DNA of 63,716 nt, counting the filler, from Reticulomyxa filosa (taxonomy: Eukaryota > Protista > Foraminifera): assembly GCA_000512085.1 (NCBI GenBank). It is 22 parts of 22 records of this genome, joined end to end, with 100 filler letters (N's around TTAATTAATTAA, not from the genome) between each part and the next. Parts side by side here need not be neighbours in the genome. Positions count along the whole stretch, not along the records: positions 9,080 to 16,846 come from ASPP01004209.1; 21 more parts are not named here. One strand, given 5' to 3'. Shown in pieces: positions 9,080-16,989 of this stretch. Each line of letters opens with the position of its first letter. Position 1 is the stretch's first letter. A model generated the notes under the pieces. That model ran no database searches. It was given only the letters and a program-made list of their open reading frames with translations, and had not been told where the DNA came from. The position numbers were made by a program, and so were the translations under genes.

Positions 9080-10190
9080 GTTTTGGAACATACAATTTAA
9101 TATTATGAAATCGATGATGTGTCCTTGATTTTTTATCAAAGAAGTCCCTATCTTCAGATACAATCAAATTGAATTGTTCGGCCTTCTTCATCACTGCAAC
9201 CGCAGTTTGTAATTTGGTTGGATTATCACATAGAATTGTAAATCTTCCAATATCAAATGCTTGATTAAAATTACCACCATAATCTGCTTGAATTTTTTCA
9301 AATAATCTTTCATTTCCTTTTAAACTAGGTGGTTTCACAACTGTAATTTCGTATTTTTGCAGTTCTGTCACTAAATTTATTTATTTCAATGCTATTCATT
9401 GCCTGTTCACTTCGTTCTCTCAAATCTTCAATACTCTTTGCATGTTGTCTTATTTCATTTGCTTTTAGTTCATATGACAACCCAAATTTAATTGTATATG
9501 AACATTGATAATTATTATCTTTCACAGGTATCGAATCACCACTTGCACAAATAGAATGCTCGGAATTATAGAACATCGCTTTGACAATGGATGTAATCGT
9601 TAGTTTTTTACAATCAGGACAACTAAATGATGTTTTATCTGAAATAAATGTAATGTCATTAAATCCAATATTTACCCATACTGGCAATTTGGCTTTTGAT
9701 GCCAAACAGGTTTCGTTGCTACAATATCCTTGCAGATTAATTCCTGGCTTTGTTTCTCCAATTTCTGTTTGTTCTGTTTCCTTTTGTACGCTTTTATTAT
9801 TTTCTTGTTCTTGCTTCTATTCATTATTTCATACAAAAGAAAGTAACTTGAGTTTTCTGAAACATAAACAAAATTAATTTGTTACCTGCTCTATATTCTC
9901 CAATTTATTATTGCCTTTACGTTCTGCTTCTAATGTATCCTATTTTTTGTAGATTAATATAAATAAAAAGAAAAGATCATGACTTTTTAAAATTATTTTA
10001 ATACCTCTTTTTCAACAAATTGTTGAACAATGTCTTTAATCACCAATTCAATATTTCCATTATGATTTGCTATTTTCTTCTGTAGCTCTTCTGTATTGAT
10101 TGAGTCTCCAAATAAGCGAATCAATGTTTTTACTTCCGTTACATATTTTCGATCTTTTTCATTTGTATCGTTATAATTATTGTCTTGCAT
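9080..10190 (-). CDS. CUE/UBA-like + Cys4 Zn-binding + RelA/SpoT-like nucleotidyltransferase domain protein (3' truncated; frameshift ~9378)
   Basis: Exon 1 VKTLIRLFGDSINTEELQKKIANHNGNIELVI; then PGINLQGYCSNETC...CPDC; then LKGNERLFEK-x-DYGG-x-DIGRFTI...DRDFFDKK...HHRFHNIKL, matching the Syn1-Syn3 layout of RelA/SpoT synthetase domains. Confidence 0.7.
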
Positions 10191-12127
10191 GCCTCCATTA
10201 CACTTCATTTTTCCTATTAAAATACAGTTCGGCACCATTCTTTGCTTCACATATTATTTATTAAGAATAAACTAAACAAGCAATATACCACTGTCAACAT
10301 CTCCATGACATATCATTGAATTTATTATCGTGAACAGCGCGGCGAAAGGCTGAGCATCACTGGTCATTATCTTTTTTTTGTACAAAAAAATAAATAAGAA
10401 CGGGGTATCTTCTTTTCCTTTATAAAAAACATGCGAAAATATAAACGAAAATCAACTTCAAGGCATTTCATCTTATTTTCTTTGATGTACAGCAATTGCA
10501 TTGCTTTTCTAAAAATGATACGTATAAATTTTTTTGCATGAAAAAGGGGGGAGACGGGGGATGAAAAAAATGATTGCAAGTTGGATGCGCTTTCGCGATA
10601 TATGCCAGAAAAACAAAAAAACCTCTTTGCCAAAATTCGAAATGAATTTTAGTTTTTCAGATACCTATTGCGGATAAGGCACAAAAGCAAAACTTGTTTT
10701 ATGTTTAAGAGCACGTGCGGAACTTGTTTTTTAAGTGTCGGAAAAGTGGAAAAAGAATTACGAACCAAAGCAGTAGTTGTGGTAGTAGGCTGACAAATCT
10801 GCTAAAGATCACAGACAGCCTGCGAATAGCAAAGATTAATGATTGAAAATGCGTAAAACTGCCTGAAGGTTCGAAAAGGGAAAAGTTGTTCACAAACTGG
10901 GAAAAAAGCACATTGTCTTTGAAACAGCGTTATATATGTTATTTTCTAGAAAAAGAATTTATCACAACGGATAGCCCAGCCATTATGTTATAACATGCAT
11001 ATCCAATCCATTTTGTTTTTGTACTTGAATGAAAACAGAAGTTTTTTGTTGAGAAAAACGTAAAAAATATTTGTCTCATTCCAACAAAAAATCAAAATAA
11101 CAACAATAATTTACAAATCCCAATTTTTTACATGTGTCAGCAACGAATTAGGTTTTCAGGAATACAATAATTTGTTAACGTATAAAGTTAAACATACAAA
11201 TGAAACGAAATTATACGTATTTAAAAAAAAAGGATCGCAACCGTGCGCTGCGTTTTGAAATTGGAAGTAGCGTTACTGCTTAAGAAAAAAGGATATAATA
11301 ATTACAGCGAAAAGTTAGCACGTCATGTCAAAAGAAAATTTTTGCCATGGATACAATTCATTTTTACTTAATAACTTTAACGTCATTGAAACTGCCCCTT
11401 ACAATGTCAATAAAATCTACAATGATATCAAATCTCTTCACATCATTTGATGTGCTTAGCTATTTATTAGTCTTAACTTTATATAATTAACTTCTATATG
11501 TCCAAAAACGTGATCAATGGCCACACATATGAGTTTCCATAATAAGTCATGAGATTGAACACAAAGTTCAAAAGTGTAAATAAATTTGAGTAGCATCAAT
11601 TTGCTTAGAATTGTCTAACAATCAGTTAAGTAGCTAAAATTTATTACTTTTTATTTCAACGTATTGGCAATGTTTTTTATTAATAACTTGTTGTTAAAAT
11701 TGAGAAAATCAATATACCAGCAATTCCACTTTCAATATCTATCTTTGAAATTGACACAGTTTTTGGTTCTACTAATGTTTGAAATCATATTTGAATTCGT
11801 TGATTTAAATATAAAAATAAGAGTTTGTCTGATGAAACAGTCATATGATCGAAAACGCAAATCATAGTATTGTCAATGCTATATATTCTCAGACTAAGCA
11901 ATGTTTTCTAATCTAAAAACAAAGTTGTCATATTGATTGCTACAATAATGTTGAAAATGGGTTGTAATACTTAAAGATGTTTTATAAGAGTTCTGACAGA
12001 TATGAAAGACCTGTACAAGTTGTAAAATGGTAGTAAGTAACAAAGAAGAATTGAAAAACAAAGCTAATATTGCAAGAAAAATCGTGAATAAAGAAAAAAA
12101 ATTATCGAGCAGCAAAAATTTTCGTAT

Positions 12128-14940
12128 TTACTCATGGCCAGATTGGCTTGGTGCATTTGGATCACTTCGAAAGGGATTGCTGTAGCTTGGAAAAGTAGAT
12201 CCCACCGTACCAAAATGGATAAGACTAAGTTGATTATATTGTATATTTCTTCTTGGTGCTTGAAAGAATTGAAAAAACAAGAAATGTGGGGGAAGAGAAA
12301 TAGAAAATAGAGTTAAATAAAACAAAATTAGTACCGATCACCCATTTCGCAGATCTATTCAAAGTTGAATACAAAAAAAATGTATAAATTTGAGTTATAT
12401 GCAAACAAAAAACAATTCAAAACTGGATCAATGTTACGACCAATGACAATTCCATCTTCTTGTGCTTCATACTGTTTAACGAAATCACCAAACACATTAC
12501 GACCAATGGCAACGACATCCCCTTTTTTCAGCCATTGATTAACCCCGACCATCATTTGCAAAGTTCCTCCATGTTCGACAAAAGACCATTTGGATTTGAC
12601 ACAAATGGTAGGCATTACCAAAGGTGGCTCCACGGTGTCGTGGATCATTCCTAAAAACGACAGCACATTTTCAACGCCTTGCAATGCGTGTGAAATATAA
12701 GCTTTCTGAAACGAAGAAGGATTGCCAATTTCGACAGTGATAGCCGGCTTTCCAGCCTTCATCGCGGCTTCTCGCAAGCTGCCATCGGGAGCAGTGCTGT
12801 GCAATATGATCTGCGGAGCCTGCAAAATGGCCATTTGTTTACACACGTCGTGATTCATATCAGCCCGTGCATACAGCGAGTTTTGTCTGCCATGCGACGC
12901 CGTGTGTAAGTCGATCAAATGTGTAATCTTTTGAACAAACTTTTGCGTCAAGCAATACACAAACTGAGATGCACCTTCGCCACTAGACGTCCCTGGGAAC
13001 CATTTGTTTAAGTCCTTCGTTTCTTGTCCACAAATGAAATGGCGAGTGCGATGAATGAACCCAGGAGGATTGGCACAAGGAATGCAAACGATTACACCTG
13101 TCAGTTCGTCCACATTGATTGCACGGATTAAACGATGAATCACACTCACTCCATTCACTTCATTTCCATGTAATGCAGCTGTAATTCCGACTACGGGTCC
13201 TTTCTAATATACATTTATTTCATTTCATTTTTTTTGTATGTAATAAAAAAAAAAAAAAAAACTTGTATTGCGAAACGATAGTGCCTTTGCAAATGATAAC
13301 AGGAAGCTTGAGCGATGTAAGTGGATCGTCGACAGCCTCGAGCCACAAACGCGTTATTGTGCCAGGTTCGCATGCGTCAATAGGTAACTCTTTCACAGTG
13401 GCGACTTGATCTTCCACAAAGAATGTGCTCAAATCCACATCTGAGCTCGGCATGGGATCTATTTGCTATTTTGATGCGTGTCATTTCATTCGATAGCAAT
13501 TGTCACAACACAATAGCGCATATCCATAAATATACATACATACATATATATGTATATATAAATATTTATATATGTGATTATATTTTTAACTGCTAATTGA
13601 CCCATTAACTCATTTAACTTTGTAATTTCGGCTTCAACGACATCTTTCTTTTGTCGAAAACGCTCCACAGATCGACTGAGACGCTGTAAATCTTGTTTGA
13701 ACTTTTTTATTTCCTAAAAAGTTAGGGGTATGATGATAAGTAGAATATACACGCATATGTGATGAAAAGTTTTGTTGTCTGCTTGGCAAATAGGAAAAAG
13801 AAACAACGAACAAAACTTTGGGGTCTTTTGAGTCATCGCCGAGGATCGCAGGCTCGGGCGTTGATTCTTTGTTTTTTGACGCGATGGGGTTGATCGATTC
13901 GTCTCTTTGACTTTTTACAACTTTTGGGCGCAGTGATAGAGAAAAGCTCGAGCTACTATTCGCCGGTTCGAGTGCTTTTACGTATTTGGTGGTATGCACG
14001 TACATACATCATGTACGACATATACATTACAAATCAAAAATAAAATATGTTCTCAATAAATTACAATTTTTTTTTAAAAAAAAAAAAAAAAACAACTTAC
14101 ATAATAATCCGCAAACATTTTCTTTGGAATAAGTGTCATATTTTTTAATAATATTGGAAATTGCCAATTCATTTTGTTTCCAAAATATCAACAAACGACT
14201 CAATGCGCGAATGGCAGTGGAAATTTTGTTGGACTTTAATTTTTCTTGTTTGAATGTTTCATTGGATGCTTTATCGGATACTTCACTAGTACTACTACTA
14301 GTACTAGTAGTAGTAGTCTCATTAGTAACCACATTTGCAGATTCGTTGGTCAAAGTAATCTGAGTCGGGCTCACATTCGCATCTGCAGATTCTTTCTCCG
14401 TGCTCGACTTTATGTCATCTTTCAATAGTGAGTCTGTTTGACTGCTTGAGAACGACTCACGACGCTTCTGTTGGTTGCCCTTCCATTGCTGATATTGGTC
14501 CGGCATCAGCAATCGCATATGCTGCTCATAGTACTTGCGCAACCGCTCTGCAATCAAGTTGTCTGCACCACCAATCTGTCCATTTGCAGATGTTTTGCGC
14601 ATTTTGGAAATGCAAATGCGAAATTACCTGCTTTCTTTTTTTTTTTTCAAAAATACTTGCTCACCTCTTTTATTAACGCTATGAAAAAATTTGCTCTTTT
14701 GTCACGAAGAGGAGTGCTTTCATTGGCCTCCAATTCAAACAAATCGTGCAATAAAATCTTCAATGCGTCGTAGTCAATGTAGTAATCTTCGAGCTGCTTT
14801 ATTTGTGACGCTTTGTACTGTTCTCCAAATTTCAACAACGACTGTGCGCGACTTAGTTTTGGCTCTTTTTTTATTGGTTCCGCTGTTTGAGAGGAGGATT
14901 GTTGTTGAGGCGTTTCTTTTTTTTCTGTTGACGCAGACAT
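12128..14940 (-). CDS. SPX domain - coiled coil - M14 succinylglutamate desuccinylase/aspartoacylase (AstE/AspA) fusion protein
   Basis: SPX N-terminal LKFGEQY...YYIDYDALK and C-terminal IIKKYD. M14 motifs TAALHGNE, NPPGF..R, DLNK.FPG, IDLHT, ITVEIG, plus a C-terminal barrel-sandwich domain. An 8-exon phase-consistent GT-AG model joins them. Confidence 0.8.
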
Positions 14941-15195
14941 CTTTTTCTTTTACCCTCTCTTCTTGTCTCGTCGACGAAAGGATCTTGGCTGAAGTGAGCC
15001 TTTTTTTTTTTTTTGAAAAAAAAAGCCAAAAGTACGTAGCAAAGCTTCCATGTATTGCAAAAGAAACGCTTAAAAATTTACTTTGGATAAATATACAAAA
15101 CAATTTTTTTTGTAAAAAAAAAAAAATATATTTCATACGAAAGTAGGAGGACAAACGAAAAAAATTCATATGTTTAGTCACAAAATAAAATAGCA

Positions 15196-16827
15196 ATGCC
15201 AGAGGCAGAAGCAGGAGCAGATGGCGATAATGTTTGTGCTCTCTTCCAGTATTCATGAATAAGAATACTGGGAACAAAAACGACCTTGCTTTCTTGTTTG
15301 TCGTCTGGATATAGGAATCACTCTCACAAGAGTCAGGATTTGAAATTTTTCACAATTTGCCACATCCTATCGAACACTTTGTTGGTCGTCGACAACTGCT
15401 GCAGCAGATTGCCGATGATCTTTTGGAAGAAGAGTTTTTCTGTTGACAAAACGCTAAACACAAAGCATATACGAGCAACAAATGAAAATGTTTGAAAAAA
15501 GAAAGAGAGAGAGAGAGAAGCCCCGAGGACAGAACAATGAAAAAGATTGTGTGTTTTGTGTGTATACAACAAATGATACAAGAACACGTTTAAGTGTAAT
15601 ATTGGGAATGAAGGGAACGGGGAAATCAGGATTGGCAACGATGATCGGACATTACTTTACAGAATATGATACATTTCAAGACGGAATATTTTATTTGCCG
15701 TTATTTAAGATGAATCAATACTACGGCTATCAAACGTTTGACGATTGTTTTTATCATATGTTACAAAGTTATTTTTTGTGATTTGTGAACAAAATGCAAG
15801 TATAAGCACAAATACAAATACAAATACAAATACAAATACAATATATTGACAGAATGCAAAATTGAAAAGCATTGGGCATTAAAAGACGATGAGAAATTGA
15901 GCAAAGCCAATATGTATCAATTGATGCGTGATTCATCCGACAGCGTGTTAGTGATTATTGATGATTTTGATAGATTCGTATATGCAAATCGATTGACTTC
16001 GACAGAGGCGAGCAAAATACTTTACAAATTGTTCCAAGGCCTTCGAAATGAATGCAAGGTTTTTATATAAATATATAAATATATAAATAAAAAAAAAATT
16101 ATATAAAATAATAAAAAAATGATATAAATGTATATATTACATGTTTGATAAGGTCGTGATAACCTCTCGAACCGAACTCCCAGTGTATAACAACTTTTAT
16201 TGCTTTATAACAAAGTACTACACCATTGAACCATTGGAATTGCGCGACGCGTCGGATTTGTTCTCGCAGCTGACGCAATATTCGGTGGGAGATATACGGT
16301 CTCATTGGACCGAGTTCCGGGACGTGACCATGTTCAAACCTTCGCACATTAAGAGATTGGCACGTTTGAATGCAAAGCTGCGCTACGAAGAGCTGAGCTT
16401 TAACGCGTTGTTGTCGCTGTATCAGGAATTTGACACCAACTTCCTGACCTCGCACAGCAACTTCCCGCCTTCCCGTGGGCCAAGCAAAAAGCACTCGGCC
16501 GCGGACGAAAACGAGGCTAGATACACGGAGGGCGAGGAAGAGGAGGAAGAGGAGGAGGAGGAGGAGGAAGAAGACTTATTGGCGGACGAAGACGAGTGGG
16601 ATGCCGAACTTACTTTGGTCGGTAGGGAAACAGAGCCTATGGATCACGAGACGGAGGAAGATAATGATGATGATCGAAGAAAAGGAAGAGGAAGAGAACG
16701 AGAACAGGAAGATATAGTCGAAGAAAAAGTGCAAAAGAAAAGAGACAAAAGCAAAGAAAGAATTGAACGAGGCAATGAACATGAAGAATTGCTTCAACCA
16801 CATCCATCTGTGGTATTATTTGTCTAA
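15196..16827 (+). CDS. NB-ARC-like STAND P-loop NTPase with acidic tail (multi-exon, probably 3' truncated)
   Basis: NLPHPIEHFVGR, Walker A GMKGTGKS, Walker B VLVIIDDFD, sensor-1 VVITSR, IEPLELRDASDLF. Confidence 0.8.
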
Positions 16828-16989
16828 ATACATTAATATATCAATANNNNNNNNNNNNNNNNNNNNNNNNNNNNNNNNNNNNNNNNNNNNTTAATTAATT
16901 AANNNNNNNNNNNNNNNNNNNNNNNNNNNNNNNNNNNNNNNNNNNNGCTTGACACGCCCCACTGCAACCCATCTATAAAAAAAAAAAAA

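What the first reader, a model, noticed from the sequence alone, without database searches (positions are those of the whole stretch)
12128..14940. SPX sensor domain fused to an AstE/AspA-type M14 deacylase
Seen: one spliced frame links SPX to the enzyme (IKE|IGGAD; GLL-T|CA via the GTAAGT donor at 14100 and acceptor at 13975; DPK|EIKK; QLA|QIDP; KGTI|KGPVVGITAALHGNE; IDP|ICEMGDR|LIHFG). Known: SPX domains bind inositol pyrophosphates and are fused to transporters, VTC, EXS, RING and ankyrin/GDPD domains; I do not recall an M14 deacylase partner. The enzyme resembles bacterial members of the family. Inference: phosphate-status control of amino-acid or peptide deacylation, possibly via a horizontally acquired enzyme.
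Basis: partly seen in the sequence, partly recalled or inferred. Interest (0 to 1): 0.8.

Follow-up and report, generated by a model that had tools for sequence, protein, structure and literature searches.

The report
SPX sensor fused to AstE/AspA-type deacylase
This foraminiferan gene does join a diverged SPX (phosphate-signal sensor) domain to a zinc deacylase, but the same fusion already sits unstudied in public databases for well over a hundred fungi, amoebae and protists.

Summary
On the minus strand, 14940 to 12128, eight GT..AG exons give one open frame of 705 codons. It has an SPX-like N-terminus, a variable linker and a complete AstE/AspA catalytic domain (Pfam 1e-35) with zinc ligands and catalytic Glu intact.

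The piece is a 7767-nt Reticulomyxa filosa contig. The gene is already public as ETO32433.1, a flawed 731-aa model that also joins both halves.

A spliced transcript-like contig from a close relative confirms the last three introns, including the 20-nt micro-exon. No transcript spans the SPX/enzyme junction. That link rests on orthologues.

About 85 of the best 120 hits to the Balamuthia orthologue carry SPX plus AstE_AspA_cat. They include chytrids, Kickxellomycotina, Mortierellomycota, Plasmodiophora and Spongospora. Transcriptome-derived fused proteins exist in Paulinella, Aplanochytrium and Mucochytrium.

A tree puts the window enzyme with these long eukaryotic forms. A 99% branch separates them from 90 rows, 87 of them short, bacterial-type proteins. 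A recent transfer into Reticulomyxa is therefore not supported.

The closest bacterial relatives usually lie next to ATP-grasp amide ligases.

I found no paper describing the fusion. This copy alone has lost two of four conserved helix-4 lysines.

Verdict: real, catalogued, uncharacterised; moderately interesting.

The parts
14665..14940 (-). Exon 1: ATG at 14940, a 36-residue low-complexity N-terminal extension, then the first SPX helix hairpin (LKFGEQ...YYIDYDALK)
   Evidence: Pfam SPX E 0.0035, profile positions 2-37. hhalign against the orthologue SPX profile gives E 4e-7, probability 92.7%. The Tyr/Tyr/Lys of the phosphate-binding cluster are kept.
14101..14575 (-). Exon 2: Ser/Thr-rich insert, then SPX helices 3 and 4, with the helix-4 motif reading ISNIIKKYDT. 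Ends in phase 1 at the GTAAGT donor.
   Evidence: Pfam SPX E 0.13, profile positions 200-325. hhalign E 6.5e-4 on the helix-4 region. Lys positions 1 and 4 are N and T, unique among 107 family members.
13817..13974 (-). Exon 3: low-complexity linker. Borders are uncertain; the public model uses different splice sites here.
   Evidence: Open frame and GC 0.49, against 0.22-0.33 in the flanking introns. No Pfam hit. Public model P0278 differs here.
13591..13713 (-). Exon 4: 41-residue helical, coiled-coil-like linker
   Evidence: Only weak coiled-coil family hits. No similarity to the orthologues' linkers, which are themselves not conserved.
13277..13465 (-). Exon 5: N-terminal strand segment of the enzyme (FFVEDQVATV...LPVIICKGTI)
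   Evidence: hhalign against the orthologue profile gives E 3.3e-10. Its junction to exon 6 is confirmed by L001.
12424..13203 (-). Exon 6: AstE/AspA catalytic domain and most of the C-terminal barrel domain. Carries HGNE, DLHTAS and TVEIG.
   Evidence: PF24827 at 1e-35. Alignment with orthologues, bacterial relatives and DoeB.
12335..12354 (-). Exon 7: 20-nt micro-exon (ICEMGDR, the last codon split)
   Evidence: L001 reads ...NIDP TCEMGDR LIHFG... without interruption. The motif is conserved in orthologues.
12128..12224 (-). Exon 8: C-terminal tail and the TAA stop (12130-12128)
   Evidence: The tail is collinear with P0001 from L001.

Best explanation
The locus is one spliced gene of the foraminiferan Reticulomyxa filosa (public model ETO32433.1). 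It belongs to a widespread but unstudied eukaryotic protein family.

In this family an N-terminal SPX domain is joined, through a variable helical linker, to a complete zinc amidohydrolase of the AstE/AspA superfamily. The enzyme falls in the branch nearest to bacterial 'predicted deacylases' and, more distantly, to DoeB.

Shown here: both domains, intact catalytic residues, the 3' splicing, the family's breadth, and the enzyme's place among the eukaryotic fused forms.

Inferred mechanism:
- As in other SPX fusion proteins, the SPX module binds inositol (pyro)phosphates. It then switches the attached hydrolase on or off, for example by relieving or imposing contact with the catalytic domain or by changing its oligomer state.
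- The substrate is probably a small N-acyl or glutamyl/aspartyl amide of the type made by ATP-grasp ligases. The closest bacterial relatives are usually encoded next to GshB/RimK-like ligases.
- In Reticulomyxa the sensor half has diverged: two of four helix-4 lysines are lost and there is an N-terminal extension. Ligand affinity or specificity may therefore be altered.
For: Gene identity:
- The piece length of 7767 nt equals the contig length of cluster member P0278, which is ETO32433.1 from R. filosa.

AstE/AspA half:
- PF24827 at 1e-35.
- HGNE, DLHTAS and TVEIG are conserved.

SPX half:
- Pfam E 0.0035 on exon 1.
- Orthologue SPX profile E 4e-7 and 6.5e-4.
- Orthologue SPX HMM against P0278 E 8.5e-13.

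Splicing:
- L001 confirms introns 5-7.
- Exon and intron GC contrast.

Same architecture elsewhere:
- 12 of 36 long hits carry SPX.
- Individual Pfam scans of orthologues.
- About 85 of the best 120 hits to Balamuthia P0125 carry PF24827 plus PF03105.
- Transcript-derived examples come from Paulinella, Aplanochytrium and Mucochytrium.

Tree:
- A 99% SH-aLRT branch puts the window and all 18 SPX rows apart from 90 rows, 87 of them short, among which are the three sequences named as bacterial.

Bacterial context:
- An ATP-grasp ligase is adjacent in 4 of 5 relatives.

SPX residues:
- The basic clusters that form the PP-InsP surface are described in PMC9911596.
Against: - No transcript covers introns 1-4.
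- Exons 3 and 4 have no homology support, and the public model splices them differently.
- An in-frame Met in exon 5 (near 13453) could start a stand-alone enzyme.
- Generic Pfam SPX scores are below the cut-off.
- Two conserved helix-4 lysines are replaced.
- No substrate or ligand has been tested for any family member. NCBIfam equivalog cut-offs for DoeB, AstE and ASPA are all missed by a wide margin.
Confidence: 0.75

Rival explanations
1. Two neighbouring genes rather than a fusion. An SPX-only protein would end in retained intron 2 (stop near 14027). A separate deacylase would start at the Met in exon 5.
For: - With intron 2 retained the frame stops after about 30 more residues (ORF 14027-14602).
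- ORF 13220-13453 starts with ATG just upstream of the enzyme's conserved N-terminal segment.
- Linker exons 3 and 4 lack homology support.
- No spanning transcript was found.
Against: - The AT-rich gaps between the two halves are only about 125 nt. Exon 3 has exon-like GC of 0.49.
- Both halves match the corresponding parts of fused orthologues.
- Fused transcripts exist in another rhizarian, Paulinella, and in stramenopiles.
- An independent public gene model also joins the halves.
Confidence: 0.1
2. The fusion is real, but in Reticulomyxa the SPX half no longer senses inositol pyrophosphates. It would survive only as a structural or oligomerisation module.
For: - Helix-4 Lys positions 1 and 4 are N and T. 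This is the only such case among 107 family members.
- Generic Pfam SPX scores are sub-threshold.
- There is a 36-residue N-terminal extension where orthologues start at MKFGK.
Against: - The Tyr, Tyr and Lys of the first helices are kept, as are the central KK of helix 4. That is the whole 'phosphate binding cluster' pattern (residue classes from PMC9911596).
- The reading frame and helix pattern are maintained.
Confidence: 0.3
3. One reading: a bacterial deacylase gene was recently transferred into this organism and fused there to a resident SPX exon set.
For: Bacterial proteins reach 44-48% identity over the whole catalytic exon.
Against: - Eukaryotic fused orthologues are as close or closer (about 50%).
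- They fall with the window on one side of a 99% branch.
- The fusion occurs in Fungi, Amoebozoa and all three SAR lineages.
- The enzyme part holds spliceosomal introns, including a micro-exon.
Confidence: 0.03

Closest known systems
Public SPX plus AstE_AspA_cat proteins. Examples: Balamuthia mandrillaris KAL6050373.1, Mortierella hygrophila KAF9539618.1 (UniRef100_A0A9P6EZM7), Plasmodiophora brassicae and Spongospora subterranea 'SPX domain-containing protein', and the Paulinella chromatophora transcript GEZN01004413.1.
   Same: - Same domain order: SPX, variable linker, full deacylase.
- About 50% identity in the enzyme.
- Same clade in the tree.
- Same conserved FxVED...LPxG segment before the catalytic domain.
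   Different: - The window copy has a 36-residue N-terminal extension and a Ser/Thr-rich insert.
- It has N and T at two otherwise conserved helix-4 lysines.
- It has a 3-residue insert, and K for R in the DLNR motif.
DoeB, N-acetyl-L-2,4-diaminobutyrate deacetylase of ectoine breakdown (PDB 6TWM/6TWL)
   Same: Best solved-structure match (E 1.4e-13) over the whole catalytic exon. Zinc-ligand and catalytic Glu motifs align.
   Different: Scores 67.6 bits against an equivalog cut-off of 402.7. DoeB has no SPX domain, and the substrate is very probably different.
Succinylglutamate desuccinylase (AstE) and aspartoacylase (ASPA)
   Same: Same Pfam catalytic family, PF24827.
   Different: Only 20-22 bits against cut-offs of 170-306. 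These are distant branches.
Bacterial 'predicted deacylase' genes in clusters with GshB/RimK-like ATP-grasp ligases
   Same: 44-48% identity and the same length of enzyme core. This is the sister group in the tree.
   Different: - They have no SPX domain.
- They sit in an operon with an ATP-grasp ligase and an unannotated protein of about 480 aa.
- No such neighbours were seen beside two eukaryotic orthologues.
Characterised SPX fusion proteins (from my own knowledge): VTC subunits, XPR1/PHO1/Syg1 (EXS), Pho87/90/91, SPX-MFS, Pho81, Gde1, SPX-RING
   Same: N-terminal SPX module ahead of an effector domain. The basic PBC and KSC residues form the PP-InsP surface (PMC9911596).
   Different: The effector here is a soluble zinc amidohydrolase. 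I found no paper describing that pairing.

Membership tests
AstE/AspA catalytic family (PF24827, M14-like zinc amidohydrolases) | Profile match above the curated cut-off | tested here: met
   123.5 bits against a cut-off of 25, E 1e-35, profile positions 2-191 of 192
AstE/AspA catalytic family (PF24827, M14-like zinc amidohydrolases) | Zinc ligands His-x-x-Glu plus a distal His, and a catalytic Glu | tested here: met
   HGNE, DLHTAS and TVEIG align with orthologues, bacterial relatives and DoeB 6TWM. The assignment of roles comes from my own knowledge of the family.
AstE/AspA catalytic family (PF24827, M14-like zinc amidohydrolases) | C-terminal barrel domain continuing to the conserved GD...H.G end | tested here: met
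   The end of exon 6 plus exons 7-8 are collinear with P0001 and the orthologue C-termini
DoeB / AstE / ASPA equivalogs (NCBIfam) | Score above the equivalog cut-off | tested here: not met
   67.6 against 402.7 (DoeB), 20 against 305.65 (AstE), 22.5 against 180 (ASPA)
SPX domain (PF03105) | Pfam match above the gathering score | tested here: not met
   Exon 1 scores 17.9 bits and exon 2 scores 12.7 bits, against 27.8. Public full-length model P0278 has no hit at E<0.1. The exons were not joined for a search.
SPX domain (PF03105) | N-terminal KFG...Y..Y...K helix hairpin | tested here: met
   LKFGEQ...YYIDYDALK aligns to the orthologue SPX profile, E 4e-7. The invariant Y19, Y22 and K26 columns of A2 are kept.
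SPX domain (PF03105) | Helix-4 basic motif K-x-x-K-K-x-x-K | tested here: inconclusive
   The window reads N-I-I-K-K-Y-D-T. The central KK is kept and the outer two lysines are lost.
SPX domain (PF03105) | Binding of InsP6 or PP-InsPs | not testable with these tools
   Needs recombinant protein and ITC or a similar binding assay
Eukaryotic SPX-deacylase fusion family (uncharacterised) | SPX half specifically related to the SPX halves of fused orthologues | tested here: met
   An HMM built from 12 orthologue SPX regions hits P0278 residues 37-245 at E 8.5e-13
Eukaryotic SPX-deacylase fusion family (uncharacterised) | Enzyme half groups with fused orthologues rather than with bacterial stand-alone enzymes | tested here: met
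   A 99% SH-aLRT split: 48 rows (18 with SPX, plus the window) against 90 rows, 87 of them short
Eukaryotic SPX-deacylase fusion family (uncharacterised) | Both halves on one mRNA in this organism | tested here: inconclusive
   The frame is continuous through GT..AG introns. Only introns 5-7 are transcript-confirmed.

The most novel reading that the evidence does not exclude
The SPX-deacylase family could be an unrecognised output arm of inositol-pyrophosphate/phosphate signalling in many fungi, amoebae and SAR protists. It would couple cellular phosphate status to hydrolysis of a specific ATP-grasp-made amide, such as a glutamyl or N-acyl amino-acid metabolite or peptide tail. The Reticulomyxa copy would be a variant with a rewired ligand surface.
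Probability: 0.3. Interest if true: 0.7.

Novelty: new variant of a known kind. Interest (0 to 1): 0.45.

Why it matters
SPX domains are the general eukaryotic receptors for inositol pyrophosphates. To my knowledge, their characterised partners are transporters, the polyphosphate polymerase, a CDK inhibitor, a glycerophosphodiesterase and ubiquitin ligases.

A conserved SPX-amidohydrolase fusion would add a direct link from phosphate signalling to amino-acid or peptide metabolism. It is present in early-diverging fungi, Amoebozoa, Stramenopiles and Rhizaria. Those groups include a crop pathogen (Plasmodiophora) and a human pathogen (Balamuthia).

The family is easy to test because the enzyme is soluble and the catalytic residues are intact. 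The value lies in the family as a whole. The Reticulomyxa gene alone is a diverged, already deposited member.

Tried and rejected
- **Joined protein not searched.** Exons were searched one by one by reference. The public model P0278 (by id) was the only full-length proxy.
- **Word search on the SPX half.** Residues 1-250 of P0278 found nothing.
- **Metagenome scans.** Scans with exon 5 and exon 2 found no relatives.
- **Relatives' contigs.** L007, L008 and L009 are all cut at the start of the catalytic exon and say nothing about the junction.
- **Linker exon 4.** It shows no similarity to the orthologues' linkers.
- **Protein atlas.** It returned only AstE clusters and an AstE+HutD cluster, with no SPX-bearing cluster of 50 or more members.
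- **Eukaryotic gene neighbourhoods.** Those in Plasmodiophora and Mortierella gave no functional hint.
- **Literature.** Searches pairing SPX with aspartoacylase, succinylglutamate desuccinylase, AstE_AspA, deacylase, carboxypeptidase and Reticulomyxa returned nothing relevant.
- **Rejected: recent HGT into Reticulomyxa**.
- **Rejected: contamination.** The enzyme part has spliceosomal introns and host-like low GC.

Full report
**What the piece is**

The usable piece (9080-16846, 7767 nt) is AT-rich eukaryotic DNA, with GC 0.27-0.30 between genes. An exact cluster look-up shows that the 731-aa public protein ETO32433.1 / UniRef100_X6P2S9 lies on a contig of exactly 7767 nt. That protein is named 'Succinylglutamate desuccinylase/aspartoacylase [Reticulomyxa filosa]'. 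Its sequence (P0278) is the translation of this locus. The organism is therefore the freshwater foraminiferan Reticulomyxa filosa (Rhizaria), and the gene is already deposited.

**Checking the observation**

I read the minus strand from 15300 to 12000. The exons are:
- E1 14940-14665
- E2 14575-14101
- E3 13974-13817
- E4 13713-13591
- E5 13465-13277
- E6 13203-12424
- E7 12354-12335
- E8 12224-12128

All seven introns are GT..AG and 69-126 nt long. The exons sum to 2118 nt, which is 705 codons plus TAA. Exon GC (0.36-0.50) stands clearly above intron GC (0.16-0.34).

Each was searched by reference, and the public model served as the full-length proxy.

**The enzyme half**

- E6 is an unambiguous AstE_AspA catalytic domain (PF24827, 1e-35).
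- The best solved structure is DoeB (6TWM, E 1.4e-13).
- The NCBIfam equivalog cut-offs for DoeB, AstE and aspartoacylase are all missed by a wide margin. This is a separate branch with an unknown substrate.
- The HGNE, DLHTAS and TVEIG motifs are intact. By my knowledge of the family these hold the zinc ligands and the catalytic Glu.
- E5 aligns to the conserved segment that precedes the catalytic domain in orthologues (E 3.3e-10).

**The SPX half**

- It is weak against generic Pfam: 17.9 and 12.7 bits for E1 and E2, against a cut-off of 27.8. P0278 has no hit at E<0.1.
- A profile made only from the SPX regions of 12 fused orthologues (A2) matches E1 at E 4e-7 and the helix-4 part of E2 at E 6.5e-4.
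- An HMM from the same alignment hits P0278 residues 37-245 at E 8.5e-13.
- It is therefore a true but diverged SPX.

**Splicing evidence**

A JGI contig from a close relative (L001, 80% nucleotide identity) reads straight through E5|E6, E6|E7 and E7|E8. This confirms introns 5-7, including the 20-nt micro-exon. It also shows that weak donors (GTTTCG, GTTTTG, GTACTA) are normal in this lineage.

The public model is wrong in several places. It retains part of intron 2, plus introns 4 and 6, and it lacks exons 7-8.

Introns 1-4 have no transcript evidence:
- Two metagenome scans found nothing.
- Other relatives' contigs stop at the start of E6.
- The linker exons 3-4 have no homology support, and the public model splices them differently.

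The fusion in this organism is thus very likely but not proven.

**How common the architecture is**

- An exhaustive HMMER search with E6 returned many long proteins (470-900 aa) with the enzyme at the C-terminus.
- 12 of the 36 scanned carry Pfam SPX. Individual scans confirmed several more.
- About 85 of the best 120 hits to the Balamuthia orthologue carry PF24827 plus PF03105.
- The taxa include many chytrids, Kickxellomycotina, Mortierellomycota, Basidiobolus, Neoconidiobolus, Massospora, Geosiphon, Saitoella, Plasmodiophora and Spongospora.
- Transcriptome-derived complete ORFs with both domains exist in Paulinella chromatophora (another rhizarian), Aplanochytrium and Mucochytrium.
- UniProt and NCBI mostly call them 'SPX domain-containing protein' or 'hypothetical protein'.
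- I found no paper that mentions the pairing.

**Origin of the enzyme**

I built a maximum-likelihood tree of 138 catalytic domains. The window and all 18 SPX-bearing rows fall on one side of a 99% SH-aLRT branch. On the other side are 90 rows, 87 of them short proteins, including the three named as bacterial.

The tree is unrooted, and some short rows on the eukaryotic side have unknown origin. Deep ancestry therefore stays open. A recent transfer into Reticulomyxa is not supported.

**Clues to function**

In four of five close bacterial relatives the gene lies beside a GshB/RimK-like ATP-grasp ligase and an unannotated protein of about 480 aa. This suggests the branch hydrolyses an amide made by such ligases. 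Two eukaryotic neighbourhoods gave no hint.

SPX domains use a phosphate-binding cluster and a lysine surface cluster to bind PP-InsPs (PMC9911596).
- The window keeps the Tyr/Tyr/Lys of the first helices and the central KK of helix 4.
- It has N and T at the two outer lysines.
- That combination is unique among 107 family members.

**Verdict**

The gene is a diverged member of a widespread, database-catalogued but uncharacterised SPX-deacylase family. It is neither a unique fusion nor a recent horizontal acquisition. Regulation by inositol pyrophosphates is a reasonable inference for the family (I put it at about 0.5) and less certain for this copy.

Noticed in passing
P0146 (Paulinella chromatophora transcript GEZN01004413.1), aligned: This fused orthologue keeps a good SPX domain. 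It has lost the first zinc His (LYGDE), the distal His (IEIQSSS) and the catalytic Glu (TFTIG), so it is probably a pseudoenzyme.
   Followed up: partly
L002-L004, L010, L011, L012 (bacterial contigs): There is a conserved cluster of an unannotated protein of about 480 aa (no Pfam or NCBIfam hit), a GshB/RimK-like ATP-grasp ligase and the deacylase. L010 and L012 also have a SET-domain gene just upstream. One relative (L005/L006) lacks the cluster.
   Followed up: partly
Proteins P0134-P0142 and the atlas cluster: Mucoromycota (for example Absidia) carry a different long fusion, AstE_AspA_cat plus HutD. It forms a separate clade in the tree.
   Followed up: no
window 12355-12423, 13466-13590, 13975-14100 (minus strand): Public model ETO32433.1 reads through intron 4 and parts of introns 2 and 6. 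It ends inside intron 6 and so misses the micro-exon and the last exon.
   Followed up: yes
window 15482-16827 (+): Exons of a neighbouring gene with a P-loop (GMKGTGKSG), a weak NACHT hit (E 0.008) and a long poly-Glu acidic tail, in a locally GC-rich stretch (0.53).
   Followed up: partly
window 9080-10250 (-): Several open frames (115, 126 and 85 aa) with no credible Pfam match; only one sub-threshold DUF3853 hit (E 0.009) on the 85-aa frame. The first runs into the piece's edge.
   Followed up: partly
window 13520-13580 (intron 4): A TA/TG-rich microsatellite-like tract (TATATACATATATATGTATGTATG...) lies inside the intron. The public model translates it as protein.
   Followed up: no
P0277 and P0103 (R. 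filosa ETO24394.1 and another short contig): Reticulomyxa holds at least two more copies of the enzyme part, at about 90% and 72% identity, on very short contigs. Whether they are fused to SPX cannot be seen.
   Followed up: no
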